A DNA stretch of 64,000 bases from Dimorphilus gyrociliatus (GCA_904063045.1 CAJFCJ010000015.1:1-64000); one strand, 5' to 3'. Numbered from the stretch's first letter, positions 1,943 through 12,743 are shown. Made by a program: numbers and translations. The notes: generated by a model not told the origin, from the sequence alone.

Positions 1943-4027
1943 GCATTGCTACAAGCTCACGACGTCGTCGCACAAGAAATATACGGTGAAGACGCTGTTC
2001 GAGTTACTCCACCCCCAGTTACTTCCTTCCTAAACGGCCAAACTCCCGGCGCTGAACATTCCTCTTCACCAGACACTGTTCCTCCTCCAACTATTCCGGA
2101 AATGGAGAATGTTACACGTGTCCGTTTAGTTCAGTTCCAAAAGAATACGGAAGAGCCAATGGGCATTACCTTGAAAATGAACGAAGAAGAAAAATGCCTG
2201 GTTGCGCGTATTATGCATGGTGGTATGATACATAGACAGGGTACATTACATGTTGGCGACGAAATAAGAGAGATAAATGGTGTTGGCGTAGCTAAACAAT
2301 CTGTCGAGGTCCTGCAGAAGATGTTGAGGGACGCAAGAGGTTCCATAACCCTCAAAATTGTGCCCAGCTATCGTAATCAGCCCGTCCAATGCGAAATATT
2401 CGTTAGGGCTTTGTTTGAGTATGATCCATCGGACGACGATCTTATACCATGTTCCCAGGCCGGAGTCGCTTTCAAAATAGGCGATATTCTACAAGTAATT
2501 TCCAAAGATGATCATAATTGGTGGCAAGCAAAGGGATGGGGTAGATCTTTTAGCGAAGCCGCCGGTTTAATCCCATCTCCAGAATTACAGGTAAGAAAAA
2601 ATAATTATCCTTCAAAGTACACACATCCACTTATAAGATACACAAGTTACTTTATCCAAAATGAAAGAAACAATAACTAATACTATCGATATGCTATCTA
2701 AAATGTATAGTGCAAATATGTAATTTCTCCCTCTCTCCTTATGTAGTTTAAAATATACTATATAGACGCAAGTATAAGAAATTAATAAAAGCTATAAAAG
2801 CCAATGTAATATTTTCTAGTACAATTCTCTCTAATTAGGAAAGTAGTAGGCTTTTTTTTCTCTTTTGAAGTACCTTTTAAATTATTTTAAATGAAAGGTC
2901 GTTAATTAAGCGATTTGTAATATCCATTAATTGTGCGGATTCGTTAGCACGCTAAATATAAATATTTAACTGAAAATTTAATTCAACATATCATTCAATG
3001 ATTTTCATAAAAACGATGGTTTACTTGTAAGTTTATCGATAGACTATTTAAAAAAATAGCGTCAGAAAGCAGATAAATTGGAAGAAATTTTATCAATCTA
3101 TCACAAGAGAGATACCAGTTATATGTTGGGCGCCTGTATATTGTCATTGACCCAGCTGCCTTGGTGTCTAATCTAGACAACTAATCTGTTTAATTAACTA
3201 CAAAAGTAATCTGCAGTCCTTGCTATATTTTTTCTTTTCTGTTTTATATATAACATGATATATTCTGCAACAATATATATATATATACTACAGTATATCA
3301 TATACAGTCTTTCTGTTCTTTTTCGTTTAAATTTAACTTATGCCTTGTCTTTTTTCTTATCACGTAGGAATGGCGAACAGCGTGTACTGCAATGGACAAA
3401 GCAAAGCATGACCAGGCTCTAAATTGCTCCTGGTGGAATAAAAAGAAGAAAACGTTCAGGGATAAGTATTTGGCAAAGCATAATGCTATTTTCGACCAAC
3501 TCGACCTAGTTACATATGAAGAAGTCGTTAGACTACCTGCTTTTATGCGGAAAACTTTGGTTCTTCTAGGAGCTCATGGAGTTGGTCGACGACACATTAA
3601 AAATACATTAATCACAAGTCACCCGGAAAGGTTCGCCTATCCAATACCCCATACAACTAGGCCACCAAAAAAAGATGAAATAAATGGAAAGAATTACTTC
3701 TTTGTCAGTCATGAACAAATGATGACTGATATAGCTGCAAATGAGTATTTGGAATATGGTACACACGAGGATGCAATGTATGGAACCAAAATCGAGACCA
3801 TAAGACAAATCCACGAACAAGGACTAATAGCAATCTTGGATGTTGAACCACAGGTATGTTTTCGATATTTCTTTTTCCTTCTCTATATATTTTTATATTC
3901 ATTCAAAAAAAAACACACAAAACAAAAATTGAACACATTTTATTATATGAGAAAAGAGGAGAGAAATAGTTTTCATTTACTCTTTTTCATACTATATTTC
4001 ATAAATTCTTATATATACTTTCGTAGG

Positions 4028-4077
<50 letters not shown>

Positions 4078-7000
4078 ATTCAGATATGTATATATGAATA
4101 TTTTATAATTTTCCTCATCTTTCTAATTTAATATTTGTGTTTATTTCATTTTTTTATTCAATATAATTATAAGTTGTCTTTCTTTAAGTTGATATATTTT
4201 CGGGAGTGAAATACGCGTGTGTATGATTAGAAAAAATCTTGAAATATATGCCTAAGGTCATAATATATGTATAAATTATATATAGCTCTATATCTAATAT
4301 TATATAGAGTAATAGGCAAAGTATGTACAACTTATAGATCTATATTTAGATACATGTGAAAAAAAAAGTGAAAAAGAGAAAGAGCCTGTCGAAATATATG
4401 TCTTGTCCTTATTTCCTGTTGCTTGATGTTTTTCTCTCCTCGCGTATTTTAGTTTTCTTTATCTTATTATTATTTTTTTCACCTAAACAAAAAGAATCGA
4501 ATGCAAAGAAAAGAATCTACGTAATATAAATTTATACATTATACTGTATATTTCAAACTTAATGTACATATATATATATACAAATACATGTTTCAGCACG
4601 ATTCTATATACATTCGTTTCTCCTTTTATTTCCTCAATTCGGAGTCGTTTTTTTTTCACTTAATTATTGATATTCTTGACTTTCGAAACCAATTAACCTA
4701 TAAAAGTAGCGTTTATAACTTAGATTTTAATTTTCCTTTCTTATATTTCTTATTTTTTACTTATTCTCTGTTTCTTTTTTTTTTACATTTAAGTTTTATT
4801 CTTAATTTATTAACATAAAAAAATTTGTTAGGGCGTAAATAAAAGAAAAAAAGAAAAAAAAATCGTTCAATGAAGGAGAGGCGATTGATCTCTCTGAATT
4901 TTTTTTTCCTTCTAATGATTTTCGCATTTTCTCTATAGGGGAAATTACGATTTTCATATGAAAAAAAAAAATACTTAACCAAAATCATACTTTCAGTTAT
5001 TATTTTTTTCTAGTTTGTTGTTTTGTTACTCTACGATAGAGAGATAAAAATTTCTATTTTTATAACAAAAGTAGGCAGTAGAGAGAATAGAAGCTAATTT
5101 TTCTGATGTTACCATAACGAAAATGAAGCAGGCGGAAACGTTTTGAGAATTTTAAATTTTTTCTCTGCTTAAACTATAAGATATAAAAGAAAAAGTAAAA
5201 AGATTCTTTAGATTATCTCCTTTTCTTTTTAATTTGGTTCGAAAATCAGGGATTAAATAATTCTATTCTTCAATATTATTTCAATAATTAAAGACACATT
5301 AATTTTTACGTAAGATAAAAAAAAAGACATGAAAAAGTTATTGCGTGTTTCTGTTATTTGTAATTTATTCATATCCTTCTTTTTCTTTATAAAAAGTACG
5401 GCATGAACATTAAAAAATCAACAAAAAAGGAAAATTATAATTAGAAAATAATATGAATCTAAGTTTACTTTATACAGTATATATATGTTTTATATATAGA
5501 AGAAAGAATTATTACGTAACTATCTTTATATACAGTATATATATATTTAAACAAAAGAAAACTCTCGAACGTATTATTTTTCTTTTCTTTATTTTCTAAA
5601 ATTATTATTTTTCTTATTATAAAAAACATAAAAAGAAACTAAAGATATATAGAACTAAAACCTACTACTATACATTTCCCTTTTTACTCTCTCTACCATC
5701 TTTATCTTTTACCATTTAATTGAATTAATACTTTTTTTTTATCTAACTTTTTGTTTTTTGTTATTTTCTAAAACAAAAACAAAAAAGAAATCTCTTCAAT
5801 CGAAAAAAAATAATTAATTAGATAAAATTATTTTATTATTTTTTTTTTTAAAAAAAAATCAACTTCCAAAAAAAAAAAAATATTTATTCAGAAAGAAAGA
5901 AAAAAACTTGTTTAAAAAAATTCCCTCCTTTAGAGCTTAAACAAAAAAAAACTTATGTTTCATCAAATGTTTGCAGCTTCTCGGCTCCGAACAGGATGTG
6001 AGTAACAAAACTATCGAGTTATTAGAGCAAACCATTACACCAATATATATTTTATATACATATATATTATATATTTTTATTCTTTTTTCGTTTCTTACTT
6101 ATTTATTATTTAATTAGAAAATTTATTAAAAGTATATTTTAATAATTAATCTTGTTTAATCGTTTTCATTTGATATTTTCTTATTTTGTCATTTATTTTC
6201 GTATTTATATAGTTATATTCACGCAGCGGCATGAACGTCTGATGAAACATAAGTTGTTCGACATTTTTATTTCATGTATGTATTTATTTATATATATATA
6301 TATTAACTAATATATATAGATATTTGGATACATACATGTATATGTGAATATGTTACTCTTTTTAGAGCGTTTCTTTTATTTAATAAGTTTTATTTAAAAA
6401 AAAGAAACATTAAACAAATTTGTTCAATCAATCATTTTCCTTCTTTCTATTTATCTTTTGGATTAAAAATATTATAATATTTTCTTAGTTTCATTTCATA
6501 TTTCTAACTATTTCTTTTTACTTTAACTTTTATACCTTTCATCTTTTCTCTTTTACTTTTATTGGTTTTCTGTTATTATTACTTTTTAGTAATTAATTAT
6601 CTATTTATTAAATTACTCTGTTTTGAACTAATATCTAGAGTAAAGAATAAATATAAGAATATACATTTTTTATTAAAACTTATATTTATATATATAAATA
6701 TATATGTATATTATTATATATATATATATATATTTAAATATATTTACTGATATTACATATACTTTATGTATATGTGTAATATATTTATTATTTACCTCTT
6801 TAAAAATGAACAAAAAATTCGGCGCTAAATATGTCGTTCATGCCGTACGTGTTGAGGCTGCGTTTTTTTTATTTGTAACTTTTTTTTCAAAAAAAAAAAT
6901 GACATTAAAAGATCCTATTTAAGATATGATTTTAAGTTTTCATTTCTAGGCAAAACTATTATTTTTTTTAGGTTAACTCTTTTTTTTGTCCTTTTATTTT

Positions 7001-9219
7001 ATTTGTTTATTTTTTCGTTTATAATTTCTTAGAATGCTATCACTTTCAAATTTAGTTTATTATTCATTTATTAAGTACTTGTATATTATATACTCATTTT
7101 GATAATAATCTTTATATAGTTAAATTTATTTAATTAATGAATTAGTTAAGTATAATTTATGCAAGTACTCTAGATTAAAGATCCTTTTTTTTTTCTTGGA
7201 AAGTCAAAAGGAATCTATCTTAGTTAATATCACTTTTTCCCTTCATAACTCGCAATAGAAATCAGTTGTATATTCATACTTATTATATTCCGGGAGGTAA
7301 AGAACTTTATACTTGTTTAGCTTAATAACGATTAGGGAAGAAATAGATTATTTAGTTTTTGGAGATGAAGGGAGAAAGTATATGTATATATATATATAAT
7401 TTAGCATGGAAATTAAAGTCTTAAGATTAGGTTTCTAATTAAGTAAAAAGAAAAAAAAAGTTAAATTTAAAAGACGCAGCCAAAAGTGTGATCCTTTAAC
7501 TTTTTTCGTTTTTTCTCGACCGGGAAAAATCTACTGTGCAGGCTCTGAAAGTTCTGCGTACCGCCGAGTTCGCGCCGCTAGTCGTGTTCATAGCGGCACC
7601 AACTGTCGCATCGTTCAATGAGGTATGTTAACATTTTCTTACTCTTTCCTCTTCTTTTTTCCCCGAACAGGCGCTCAAAGTGTTGCGCACGGCACCATTC
7701 GCTGGATTTATCGTCTTCGTCGCCGCTCCTGATTTGCAGACCCTTGCCAAACTTCGCACAAACAACGTCTCCGTGAGTGCCATCATCGCGCAACACACGG
7801 ATCCTTTTTTTTTCTTTTTTTCTTGTCTTTCTTTCAATCTACCTACTACTACCTATTCCTGCCTCCTAGATAACTCTTTGATTAATCATTCCTTCTTCAT
7901 TTCTTTCACATCTTTCCCCGTCAACATCACCCACCTCCTCTACAATCTTTCAATTCTTTCCCTTCTCCATTTTCTTCAAACCCCTGCTTAACCTTTTTTA
8001 AGAAATTACCATTCTCTCACTTTGGACTTAAAAAGGAGGAATATGCAAATGAAAAATTTGAAGATACCAGTTCATCAACTATTTTCATTTTATCCCTCTA
8101 AACTATTCCCCACCCCATCGATTTTTACTAAAAGGCCAAGAATGGTTAAGATACTGAGGATCGCCTCTTTTGAAAAACTAATGATAGATGTTTATTTAAG
8201 AAAAAGAGAGTGATAGACAGAAAAAAAGGGTGTGAGAAAGAAATAGAAAAACAGATAGAAAGATAGATAAATAGAAGAGAAAAGAAAAGTAGATAGAAAG
8301 AAAGTGAAGGCTAGAGAGTGAGAAAGAGAGATATTTAGACCGAGAAAAATATAAAGAATATATTGCAGGTTTCTTTTCTTAGCTTTTTATCGTGAAGATA
8401 AATTAGACCCAAGGCTTAGCACCAAGATTTTACCGCTTATCTAAATCATTTAAATCATCAAGGGAGGATTTCTTTTTTGTGAATCATGGAACAATCTTTA
8501 CGACAGTCGAGAGGGAAGGCGAAGAAAAGATTCAAATTAATTAATTTTAAAAATATATCAGGATTTGATATGAGACGAGAACACTTAGAGGAGATTTAGA
8601 GTTGATCTATCCTGATTCTCAGGCAATTGAGATAATTAGCTGTCATTTAAGTTTAGTCAATTTCATAATTATATAAACTGAAGAGAGAAAGAGGGGGCAA
8701 TGCATATACAGTGACAGAAAAAATCAAGGCAGTAAATAAGAAACGAGAAAGAGATAAAGAATGGGATATGCAGTACAAAGAGAGAGAGAGAGAGGGTGGG
8801 GGGAGGGGGGGGGGTAGAGTGTGTCTGATTGTGAACTATGGGCACAGAATATTGACATAAATAAATTGAAAGAATAGAAAAAGAAAATTTATAACATAAT
8901 TCAATTTAATATGAGATCCTCATATCCAATCATATCTATTCCTTTTCTTATTACGCTTTATTGTGATTATTATTATAACTTAATAATAATTGTTTGTATC
9001 CGAAAAAAAGATTTAGTTTTTCCCCTTTTTTTTTCTTTATAGGATGGAAGTTTAGAGCGATTAGCTCGAGAATCCGAACTATTAGAAAAGGCTTATGGAC
9101 ATTACTTCGATTTGAAAATCGTTAACAACGATATTGAAGAAACTATACATACACTGCAAAGAGCTATCGATGAAGTTTGCAGCACACCACAATGGGTACC
9201 AGTTTCCTGGGTCTATTGA
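1943..9219 (+). CDS. CASK: CASK/LIN-2 MAGUK, 3' half (end of L27, PDZ, SH3, HOOK, guanylate kinase-like); upstream exons not identified and presumably outside the window
   Basis: Exons 1943-2590 ([10 protein letters not shown]...[25 protein letters not shown]...IPSPELQ), 3368-3853 (EWRTACT...[11 protein letters not shown]...ILDVEPQ), 7542-7622 or 7671-7772, and 9043-9219 ([11 protein letters not shown]...[10 protein letters not shown]). All junctions are GT-AG and phase 0. The C-terminal WVPVSWVY is the CASK signature. Confidence 0.97.
5977..5997 (+). CDS. Candidate 21-nt CASK microexon (LLGSEQD)
   Basis: tttgcag|cttctcggctccgaacaggat|gtgagtaac; GC-rich island in an AT-rich intron, phase 0, no stop. 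Confidence 0.6.
7542..7622 (+). CDS. CASK: CASK GK-domain exon variant A (canonical-like)
   Basis: gtgcag|GCTCTG...AATGAG|gtatgt, 81 nt, [27 protein letters not shown]. Confidence 0.92.
7671..7772 (+). CDS. CASK: CASK GK-domain exon variant B (duplicated, divergent)
   Basis: Pyrimidine tract + gaacag|GCGCTC...GTCTCC|gtgagt, 102 nt, [34 protein letters not shown], same phases as exon A. Confidence 0.85.
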
Positions 9220-10228
9220 ATATTTTTAAGGATCATATTGGGAAGAGATTTTTTTAAGTACAAAAATTTGGAAGAAAATAAAAAATTAAAGGGAACTTTT
9301 TCTCTTTCAAAAGAGGAAAAAAATGAGTTAAAGGAGACAAAGAACTGTTTTTGTTTTCATTTTATAAAAGTCATAGTTTGTAGTTACAAAAGAAAGAAGA
9401 GAAAAGAAAAACGAAGTAAACCGTGAAAAAAAAAGGACTAATTATTTTTCTTTTAGCGGTTTCAAATTTTTATGTTTCCTTTTTCATATTCTTTTTTTTT
9501 TGTGCATATTTTCGACCATTTAAAGGAGAAAATATATGATAATTTGTGATTCTTTTGACAGAAAAAAAAGACAAAAGACAAACTATCCCTTTAAAAAAAA
9601 ATTTGACAAAAAAAACAAAAAAAAACTAAAAAATGATAAACATACAAAAGATAAACGATCGATTAGAAAAAAAACAAACAACGGTAGAAAGAAACGTAGT
9701 AAAGAATTTGTTATACACGTTTTAAAGAAACATTTGTGATTGTTATAGAAAAATAAATCTTTTTGAAAGAATACCTACAAAAGAAAAGTATTATGAATTA
9801 TTTATCTAATTAGTTAATTAATTGTATTATATTATTACTCTATTTATTAATTAATGACTAACCAAACAAACATATTAAGTATACACCTTATAGTTTTTGT
9901 CATTCAAGCTGCCACATCGACATTTAATGCATATATAGATAATCTCTAGTAAGTAAATTTTGAAAAATAATAATGATAAATTCTGATATATTTACATACA
10001 GTGATTAATGAATATTCAAATTAGGTTGATAAAGATAGAGATGACATTTTTGTTTATAAGAAAAAAATAATTAAAAGATAAAAAGAATGGATGGATGATA
10101 AAAAGTATTCCCTAACATTATAAACCTCACCCTTTCGAACCTTTTTCTTTATCTCTTATAGCTTTTGCACTCATTCTCATTCTCTCTCGCTCGCTCGCTC
10201 GCTTACTCTCTTTTTCTTTCTCTGCATT

Positions 10229-12743
<2,515 letters not shown>

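What the first reader, a model, noticed from the sequence alone, without database searches (positions are those of the whole stretch)
7542..7772. Tandem-duplicated, probably mutually exclusive exons in the CASK guanylate-kinase domain
Seen: two homologous phase-0 exons. A is [27 protein letters not shown] (81 nt) and B is [34 protein letters not shown] (102 nt), each with good splice sites. They are separated by only 48 nt (7623-7670), shorter than the ~55-90 nt introns I measured elsewhere. A branch-point-like ttaac (A at 7631) sits 8 nt from the exon A donor, followed by a long pyrimidine tract. Established: a branch point too close to the upstream donor enforces mutual exclusion by steric hindrance (alpha-tropomyosin exons 2/3). 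A matches canonical CASK; B changes the EFAP motif and lengthens the following segment by 7 aa. Inference: two GK-domain isoforms with different ligand or SH3-GK interactions.
Basis: partly seen in the sequence, partly recalled or inferred. Interest (0 to 1): 0.8.

Follow-up and report, generated by a model that had tools for sequence, protein, structure and literature searches.

The report
Two swappable exons in CASK gene
This small worm's gene for the synapse scaffold protein CASK has two alternative copies of one exon, each messenger RNA uses one of them, and the same pair occurs in molluscs, a ribbon worm and a moss animal, so it is a real, old but ordinary kind of splicing switch.

Summary
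Exon A (7542-7622, 81 nt) and exon B (7671-7772, 102 nt) are homologous phase-0 exons with AG/GT borders, 48 nt apart.

- **Splicing:** Assembled RNA contigs from three runs, covering the same organism and a relative about 8% diverged, show 3853>7542, 3853>7671, 7622>9043 and 7772>9043. They show no A>B joint and no skip of both. This is the mutually exclusive pattern, at contig resolution only.
- **Selection:** 15 of 20 shared residues are identical, yet 12 of those 15 codons differ. The duplication is therefore old and both copies are under selection.
- **Age:** The pair is not specific to this genome. The same layout (81-nt A first, 96-102-nt B second) is in Bugula, Lottia and Magallana gigas DNA. 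RefSeq lists A-only and B-only CASK isoforms in many molluscs, and some A+B models.
- **Mechanism:** In those species the A-B intron is 342-498 nt, so steric hindrance cannot be the ancestral mechanism. For this compact genome it is plausible (about 0.55) but untested.
- **Function:** The functional difference between the isoforms is untested. Models of oyster isoforms place the difference in a low-confidence linker after a core strand.

A 21-nt microexon was seen joined only to A. This is a new member of a known kind. The scan had already noted the microexon and intron pairings on this same window.

The parts
3368..3853 (+). Constitutive upstream CASK exon (hook region and N-terminal two thirds of the GK domain). 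It ends ..AILDVEPQ|gtatgt and is the donor for the microexon, exon A or exon B.
   Evidence: Joints from 3853 to 5977, 7542 and 7671. 75-86% identical to spiralian CASK.
5977..5997 (+). 21-nt microexon (LLGSEQD), inserted between ..VEPQ and exon A.
   Evidence: Joints 3853>5977 and 5997>7542 in run X3. No 5997>7671 joint was seen. A related metatranscriptome contig, P0002/L005, has LLGTEMD followed by an A-type exon.
7431..7541 (+). Intron stretch directly upstream of exon A, conserved in the related species. Possibly a regulatory element.
   Evidence: record 4 of X1/X2. A 340-nt contig lies on 7431-7567 with 6 other letters and 1 gap. The constitutive exon 3600-3854 has 20 differences in 255 nt, and most of the rest of the intron does not align.
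7542..7622 (+). Exon A, 81 nt, 27 aa, canonical CASK form (tail TVASFNE).
   Evidence: Joints 3853>7542, 5997>7542 and 7622>9043. Same 81-nt exon in Bugula, Lottia and M. gigas.
7623..7670 (+). 48-nt intron between A and B. GT..AG, in-frame TAA at 7629-7631. yUnAy motifs have their A at 7631 and 7641, that is 8 and 18 nt from the donor.
   Evidence: No contig joins 7622 to 7671.
7671..7772 (+). Exon B, 102 nt, 34 aa, divergent form (PFAG instead of EFAP, and a longer tail [14 protein letters not shown]).
   Evidence: Joints 3853>7671 and 7772>9043 in all three runs. Orthologous long-tailed exons of 96-102 nt in Bugula, Lottia and M. gigas.
9043..9219 (+). Last coding exon ([17 protein letters not shown] plus stop). 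It is the common acceptor for A and B.
   Evidence: Joints 7622>9043 and 7772>9043.

Best explanation
Exons A and B are a real pair of mutually exclusive exons made by an old tandem duplication of one CASK exon. Each mature mRNA carries A (with or without the upstream 21-nt microexon) or B, between the ..LDVEPQ exon and the last exon. This gives two versions of one helix, one core beta-strand and the linker into the next long helix of the GK domain.

Shown:
- Both exons are spliced to the common neighbours.
- Neither an A-B joint nor a skip of both appears in the contigs.
- Both copies are under purifying selection.
- The same A-then-B layout exists in molluscs, a bryozoan and a nemertean gene model.

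Inferred (about 0.55): in this compacted genome the intervening intron has shrunk to 48 nt. U1 on A's donor and U2 on B's branch point would sit 8-18 nt apart and could not assemble together. This would make A-to-B splicing impossible and lock the choice sterically.

Inferred: because inclusion of both exons or of neither keeps the frame, exclusion cannot rest on nonsense-mediated decay (NMD). It probably matters because a doubled or missing core strand would misfold.

Unknown: what selects A or B, and what the isoforms do differently.
For: - Sequence and splice sites.
- Junctions: 3853>7542 (X1, X2, X3), 3853>7671 (X1, X2, X3), 7622>9043 (all), 7772>9043 (all), and 3853>5977 with 5997>7542 (X3). 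There is no 7622>7671 and no 3853>9043. X3 is 100% identical to the window. X1/X2 differ at 20 of 255 nt in the upstream exon, so the pattern holds in a second species. Unitig depths for A and B joints are of the same order.
- Selection: 15 of 20 shared residues are identical, with 12 of those 15 codons different. The two listed interspecies differences in A (7586) and B (7700) are third-position and synonymous.
- Conservation of the layout: A is 81 nt and B is 96-102 nt, in the same order and phase, in Bugula L004, Lottia L006 and M. gigas L008. A-only and B-only RefSeq isoforms exist in oysters, mussels, scallops, abalone, limpet, whelk and chiton. The Tubulanus model carries both exons.
- Steric reading: the intron is 48 nt against a published median of 66 bp. 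Predicted short introns in the window are 64-83 nt, with branch-like motifs about 42-45 nt from the donor, against 8 and 18 nt here. RefSeq has A+B models only where the intron is long (oysters 384 nt).
Against: - All RNA evidence is assembled contigs, which drop rare forms. Low-level A+B inclusion or retention of the 48-nt intron cannot be excluded.
- The runs are only guessed to be RNA, although their spliced joints show they contain cDNA.
- The branch point is not mapped.
- The shortest spliceable intron in this genome was not measured. The comparison introns in the window are predictions.
- Introns of 40-50 nt are spliced normally in some animals such as C. elegans (my own knowledge).
- Molluscs keep A-only and B-only isoforms with a 342-384-nt intron, so something other than steric hindrance can govern the choice and may do so here as well.
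Confidence: 0.75

Rival explanations
1. The exons are mutually exclusive, but the choice and the exclusion are set by regulators or competing RNA structures, as they must be in molluscs. On this reading the 48-nt intron is only a by-product of genome compaction.
For: A-only and B-only isoforms exist with a 342-384-nt A-B intron in Lottia and M. gigas. About 110 nt directly upstream of exon A is conserved between the two species.
Against: An inverted-repeat scan of 7200-9100 gave only low-complexity purine/pyrimidine matches. No UGCAUG or other common regulator motifs were found in 3854-9042. A 48-nt intron leaves no room for a selector element between the exons. Regulators alone rarely give complete exclusion when both in-frame combinations are possible.
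Confidence: 0.35
2. The exons are not strictly exclusive. A is an optional exon that can be included together with B, as in the RefSeq A+B models of oysters and chiton, and the contigs simply missed that form.
For: A+B models exist: P0259, P0370, P0373 and P0375 (oysters), P0251 and three others (Liolophura), plus Mya, Pinctada, Lottia and Tubulanus. Inclusion of both keeps the frame. Contigs drop rare variants (tool note).
Against: No 7622>7671 joint appears in any of three runs, while all four exclusive joints are present at depths of 60-815. B is skipped when A is used (7622>9043), so B is not constitutive. Several A+B models are ab initio predictions, which join any in-frame exons. A doubled helix and core strand is unlikely to fold.
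Confidence: 0.07
3. Exon B is a decaying, unused duplicate.
For: B departs from the canonical EFAP motif, which is otherwise nearly invariant.
Against: B is joined to both neighbouring exons in all three runs, at depths equal to or above those of A. The reading frame and splice sites are intact. Synonymous sites are saturated while the residues are kept. B differs at only 4 of 106 nt in the related species. B-type is the commonest annotated form in other spiralians.
Confidence: 0.01

Closest known systems
Alpha-tropomyosin exons 2/3 (steric-hindrance mutually exclusive exons; recalled from my own knowledge, not read here)
   Same: There are two adjacent alternative exons. The branch point of the downstream exon lies too close to the donor of the upstream exon for the intervening intron to be spliced.
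   Different: There the branch point was mapped and the mechanism shown by spacing mutants. Here it is inferred from a 48-nt intron and sequence motifs only. In tropomyosin the exons are also under tissue-specific repression. No regulator is known here.
OGDH exons 4a/4b (PMC7969005) and Dscam exon 17 (cited there as PMC3917985)
   Same: An ancient exon duplication gave a mutually exclusive pair. [quoted passage not shown] The title of the Dscam exon 17 paper names steric hindrance combined with RNA secondary structure.
   Different: These are different genes and lineages. For CASK the restriction is seen only in the compact genome, and the orthologous intron is 342-498 nt in molluscs and Bugula.
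CASK isoforms in RefSeq annotations of molluscs (for example Magallana gigas X9 with A and X1/X3 with B; Haliotis, Patella, Mytilus, pectinids, Liolophura)
   Same: It is the same exon pair at the same position, in the same order and with the same sizes: A of 27 aa with tail T-I/L-x-x-x-x-E/Q, and B of 32-35 aa. A microexon precedes A in oysters (LNTW) and chiton (VKFHHGHPILQ).
   Different: Those are automatic models, some of which join A and B. Their A-B intron is 342-384 nt where measured. In molluscs A is the more divergent copy (AIRVLRNGEY..), whereas here B is (TAPFAG). I found no paper describing the pair.
Mammalian CASK alternative splicing (for example exon 11 skipping, PMC7397853)
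   Same: It is the same gene family, and alternative splicing tunes the scaffold.
   Different: The mammalian events read here are cassette exons outside the GK core. Vertebrate CASK sequences recovered here carry a single A-type exon with tail TITPGLNE.

Membership tests
Mutually exclusive exons arising from tandem exon duplication | Adjacent exons that are homologous to each other, in the same phase, and interchangeable without breaking the frame | tested here: met
   The exons are 81 and 102 nt, both phase 0-0, with 15 of 20 identical residues in the shared part.
Mutually exclusive exons arising from tandem exon duplication | Each exon is spliced directly to the common upstream and downstream exons | tested here: met
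   Joints 3853>7542, 3853>7671, 7622>9043 and 7772>9043 are present in X1, X2 and X3.
Mutually exclusive exons arising from tandem exon duplication | The two exons are not included together, and not both skipped, in mature mRNA | tested here: inconclusive
   No 7622>7671 joint and no 3853>9043 joint among the contigs of three runs. Contigs show presence rather than absence, and no raw reads were available.
Steric-hindrance type (alpha-tropomyosin 2/3, OGDH 4a/4b) | The intervening intron, or the donor-to-branch-point distance, is below what the spliceosome can use | tested here: inconclusive
   The intron is 48 nt against a published median of 66 bp. yUnAy motifs lie 8 and 18 nt from the donor, against about 42-45 nt in predicted 71-83-nt introns of the window. 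The genome's lower limit was not measured and the branch point was not mapped.
Steric-hindrance type (alpha-tropomyosin 2/3, OGDH 4a/4b) | Lengthening the intron allows both exons to be included | not testable with these tools
   There is only a weak natural comparison. Species with a 384-nt intron (oysters) have annotated A+B models.
NMD-enforced mutually exclusive exons | Inclusion of both exons or of neither shifts the frame | tested here: not met
   Both lengths are multiples of 3 (81 and 102), so all combinations stay in frame.
Splice-site incompatibility (U2/U12) type | One exon is flanked by a U12-type site and the other by a U2-type site | tested here: not met
   All four sites are ordinary GT-AG. 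The donors are gtatgt and gtgagt, and none resembles the U12 consensus (RTATCCTT, from my own knowledge).
Docking-site/selector RNA competition type (Dscam exon 6, 14-3-3 zeta) | A conserved intronic docking site is complementary to a selector next to each alternative exon | tested here: inconclusive
The inverted-repeat scan of 7200-9100 found only low-complexity A-rich/U-rich pairs. A conserved element at 7431-7541 exists, but no partner for it was identified.
CASK (MAGUK with CaM-kinase, L27, PDZ, SH3 and GK domains) | GK domain with the CASK-type C-terminus ..[10 protein letters not shown], and orthology to named CASK proteins | tested here: met
   The upstream exon is 75-86% identical to CASK of Bugula, Liolophura and others. 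An oyster proxy aligns to human CASK GK structure 1KGD with E 1e-84. PDZ and SH3 coding sequence lies at 1937-2617. The kinase domain lies outside the window.

The most novel reading that the evidence does not exclude
The A/B pair may be older than Lophotrochozoa. It could have been a GK-lid switch present in the protostome-deuterostome ancestor and then lost differentially. On this reading deuterostomes kept the short A type (tails TIAHMND, SIASMNE, TITPGLNE) and ecdysozoans kept a B-like type (SLQNMTDY resembles nemertean B, SLQTMTEARVIN). Only lophotrochozoans still run the switch, together with an A-linked microexon. In the miniature annelid, genome compaction would then have turned a regulated choice into a sterically locked one.
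Probability: 0.15. Interest if true: 0.65.

Novelty: new member of a known kind. Interest (0 to 1): 0.45.

Why it matters
CASK is a central synaptic and cell-junction scaffold, and its GK domain is a protein-binding module. An alternative-exon switch inside the GK core, kept across at least four phyla (annelid, mollusc, nemertean, bryozoan), suggests two functionally distinct scaffolds that vertebrate and fly work would never have revealed.

The comparison between a 48-nt and a 342-498-nt intervening intron offers a natural test. It can show whether genome compaction can replace regulated exclusion with a physical block.

The apparent coupling of the upstream microexon to exon A is a testable case of coordinated splicing.

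None of this changes the basic picture. The kind of element (tandem-duplicated mutually exclusive exons) and the proposed mechanism are well known.

Tried and rejected
1. **Intron lengths from the window.** I estimated them by ORF-flanked GT..AG scanning. The strict scan gave only 10 candidates and the relaxed scan was pure noise. The lower limit of spliceable introns was therefore not measured.
2. **Genomic DNA of the A-B intron in the related species.** I searched with the ORF that runs from exon B into the intron. Nothing was found.
3. **Classing single-copy exons of other phyla as A-like or B-like.** I used profile HMMs built from spiralian A and B exons. The differences were only a few bits, and Bugula went the wrong way. 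Orthology therefore rests on layout, not sequence.
4. **Apparent loss of A in Capitella and of B in Elysia.** Both loci have runs of N in the relevant interval, so absence is not shown.
5. **Docking/selector pairings.** The scan of 7200-9100 gave only low-complexity matches.
6. **Known regulator motifs.** UGCAUG, YCAY clusters, CUCUCU and UGCUGC showed nothing notable.
7. **More genomic loci.** Tubulanus and Liolophura genes are too long to fetch. Two oyster isoforms are not on record.
8. **Rejected mechanisms.** NMD enforcement and U2/U12 incompatibility were rejected on sequence grounds.
9. **Literature.** No paper describing a CASK or MAGUK GK-domain mutually exclusive pair was found in the library.
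10. **Joined exon models.** Oyster RefSeq isoforms served as proxies.

Full report
**1. Observation**

The sequence is as described.
- Exon A, 7542-7622, is 81 nt and reads [27 protein letters not shown].
- Exon B, 7671-7772, is 102 nt and reads [34 protein letters not shown].
- Both start after AG and end before GT (gtatgt and gtgagt), and both are phase 0-0.
- The intron between them, 7623-7670, is 48 nt. It has an in-frame TAA at 7629-7631, so retaining it would end the reading frame.

The neighbouring exons are 3368-3853 (ends ..AILDVEPQ|gt) and 9043-9219 ([17 protein letters not shown] plus stop).

The gene is CASK.
- The 3368-3853 exon is 75-86% identical to CASK of Bugula, Liolophura and others.
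- An oyster orthologue used as proxy aligns to the solved human CASK GK domain 1KGD with E 1e-84.

I did not verify that independently. The AT-rich compact sequence and the spiralian best hits are consistent with it.

**2. Are both exons used, and how?**

I laid three public runs, held as assembled contigs, on 3600-9300.
- X3 matches the window at 100%.
- X1 and X2 are one sample of another organism, with 20 differences in the 255 nt of the upstream exon.

The joints found were:
- 3853>7542, 3853>7671, 7622>9043 and 7772>9043 in all three runs.
- 3853>5977 and 5997>7542 in X3 only. These show a 21-nt microexon (LLGSEQD) joined to exon A.

No joint 7622>7671 (A to B) was listed, none for 3853>9043 (skip of both), and none for 5997>7671 (microexon to B). 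Unitig depths of the A and B joints are of the same order (X3: 349+337 into A or the microexon, 815 into B, 648 and 585 out).

The limits are as follows.
- These are contigs, which show presence and not absence.
- The runs are only guessed to be RNA, although spliced joints prove cDNA is present.
- Depth is a poor measure of level.

**3. Age and selection**

In the 20 codons the exons share, 15 residues are identical but 12 of those 15 codons differ. Synonymous sites are therefore near saturation while the protein is kept, which excludes a recent duplicate or a decaying copy.

Between the two species, A has 2 differences in 82 nt and B has 4 in 106 nt. The upstream constitutive exon has 20 in 255 nt. 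The two listed differences (7586 and 7700) are third-position and synonymous.

About 110 nt of intron just upstream of A (7431-7541) is also conserved between the species, while most of the intron is not.

The alternative exons are GC-rich at third positions, at 0.57-0.62 against 0.29-0.38 in constitutive exons.

**4. The pair is not peculiar to this genome**

A word search with the upstream exon found fragments with either a short tail (for example TVSSFNE preceded by microexon LLGTEMD in P0002) or a long tail.

I then ran the exhaustive representative search. I justified its cost because the dating claim rests on the presence or absence of relatives. It gave full-length ids. A regional search with the chiton protein P0123 gave named CASKs.

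Seven gene models carry both exon types in tandem: Liolophura, Mya, Lottia, Pinctada, Crassostrea gigas, the nemertean Tubulanus and one unnamed model.

Listing the 90% clusters showed RefSeq isoforms with A only and with B only in:
- Magallana/Crassostrea and Ostrea
- Mytilus
- pectinids
- Haliotis
- Patella
- Babylonia
- Liolophura

A+B models appear in oysters and chiton.

In genomic DNA the layout is the same.

| Species | Exon A | Exon B | A-B intron |
|---|---|---|---|
| This window | 81 nt | 102 nt | 48 nt |
| Bugula neritina | 81 nt | 96 nt | 498 nt |
| Lottia gigantea | 81 nt | 96 nt | 342 nt |
| Magallana gigas | 81 nt | 102 nt | 384 nt |

All exons have AG/GT borders and phase 0.

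Single-copy cases:
- Rotifer-like contigs have one copy fused to the upstream exon.
- Capitella shows only B and Elysia only A. Both loci have assembly gaps where the other exon should be, so loss is not shown.
- Deuterostome, arthropod and nematode proteins recovered here have one exon.

Profile scoring could not assign these single exons to A or B. The identical order, the constant 81-nt A and the longer B argue for one duplication, at the latest in the common ancestor of annelids, molluscs, nemerteans and bryozoans. An older origin is possible but unsupported.

**5. Mechanism**

I considered four known ways of enforcing exclusion.
- **NMD cannot apply.** Both lengths are multiples of three.
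- **U2/U12 incompatibility does not apply.** All sites are ordinary GT-AG.
- **Competing RNA structures were not supported.** In 7200-9100 the only complementary pairs are low-complexity A-rich/U-rich tracts.
- **Steric hindrance fits the anatomy here.** The intron is 48 nt, against a published median of 66 bp (PMC7854359). The two branch-like motifs have their A at 7631 and 7641, only 8 and 18 nt from A's donor. The second lies 29 nt from the acceptor, which is the usual distance. In predicted (unverified) 71-83-nt introns of this window, such motifs lie about 42-45 nt from the donor.

On the steric reading, U2 bound for B's acceptor would exclude U1 at A's donor and vice versa. A transcript would then commit either to A-then-last-exon or to upstream-exon-then-B.

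Two facts limit the claim.
- Molluscs make A-only and B-only forms with a 342-384-nt intron. Steric hindrance is therefore not the ancestral mechanism and is not required for alternative use.
- I could not measure how short an intron this species can splice.

The annotated A+B models occur in species with a long intron, which is weakly consistent with the short intron tightening exclusion. I put the steric mechanism at about 0.55.

Close precedents:
- Alpha-tropomyosin exons 2/3 (from my own knowledge).
- OGDH exons 4a/4b (PMC7969005; abstract, introduction passage).
- Dscam exon 17 (cited in the OGDH paper).

**6. What the exons encode**

Instead I folded the SH3-GK region of the M. gigas B isoform (P0378:640-936) and A isoform (P0369:624-913), using a 50-sequence alignment.

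In both models the exon encodes three parts:
- a short helix (ALKVLRT, residues 204-210);
- a core strand (VVFIAAP, 217-223);
- the linker to the next long helix.

The linker differs between the two.
- In A it is about 10 residues, with pLDDT of about 72.
- In B it is about 16 residues and contains a low-confidence helical turn (230-233, block pLDDT of about 53).

Against human CASK (1KGD), the B form has a 6-residue insertion at this point. From memory of guanylate kinase sequences, this linker corresponds to the start of the LID segment, and B's DLxxL/MK pattern resembles true guanylate kinases and MPP1 more than A does. That is a lead and not a test.

The Dimorphilus-specific changes in B (E to P and P to G in the EFAP motif) are not shared by other spiralian B exons. 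No functional difference has been shown.

**7. Novelty and verdict**

Searches of the paper library found no description of a mutually exclusive pair in the GK domain of CASK or other MAGUKs. The mammalian CASK event read here is a cassette exon elsewhere in the gene. The isoforms do exist silently in automatic RefSeq annotations of molluscs.

The element is a new, well-supported member of a known kind. Its modest added interest comes from three points:
- the phylum-spanning conservation;
- the apparent coupling to a microexon;
- the contrast in intron length.

The reading as mutually exclusive exons is supported. The steric mechanism and the functional inference remain inferences.

Noticed in passing
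window 5977-5997; also P0371, P0370 (oysters), P0402 (Liolophura), P0002/L005: In every sequence seen, a microexon between ..VEPQ and the alternative exons is followed by exon A. The forms are LLGSEQD here (joint 5997>7542 only), LLGTEMD in P0002, LNTW in oysters and VKFHHGHPILQ in chiton. This suggests coordinated splicing and a conserved insertion point with unrelated sequence.
   Followed up: partly
window 7431-7541: The intron stretch just upstream of exon A is better conserved between the two species than the constitutive coding exon. It has about 6 differences and 1 gap over 137 nt including 26 nt of exon, against 20 in 255 nt. It may be a splicing control element.
   Followed up: partly
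window exons 5977-5997, 7542-7622, 7671-7772 versus 1937-2617, 3368-3853, 9043-9219: The three alternative exons have third-position GC of 0.57-0.62. The constitutive exons of the same gene have 0.29-0.38, and the surrounding introns have overall GC of 0.21-0.35.
   Followed up: no
window 7445-7460 versus 7804-7819 and 9025-9041: A 16-nt A-rich tract upstream of exon A is perfectly complementary to a U-rich tract just downstream of exon B. It is 94% complementary to the pyrimidine tract of the last exon's acceptor. The tracts are low complexity, so this may be chance in an AT-rich genome.
   Followed up: no
L004:11802-11882 and L004:12381-12476 (Bugula neritina VXIV02001063.1): The bryozoan CASK has the same two tandem exons (81 and 96 nt), 498 nt apart. 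The first copy is strongly divergent (VVLISVP instead of VVFIAAP), and no RNA evidence for it was seen.
   Followed up: partly
L003:11370-12429 (Elysia chlorotica RQTK01000273.1): About ten tandem copies of the last 15-23 codons of the upstream CASK exon (..[16 protein letters not shown]) follow the real exon end. This is either an assembly artefact or a real tandem repeat of an exon end with its donor.
   Followed up: no
P0286-P0303 (Branchiostoma CASK isoforms): Amphioxus CASK has an A-type exon (tail SIASMNE) followed by 9 extra residues, VQKKAMNAN, before the last exon. This lengthens the same linker by another route.
   Followed up: no
window 10613-11239, minus strand: ORFs with a cytidylyltransferase-like HxGH motif (..[13 protein letters not shown]..) lie about 1.4 kb downstream of CASK on the opposite strand. 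The family was named from the motif alone.
   Followed up: no
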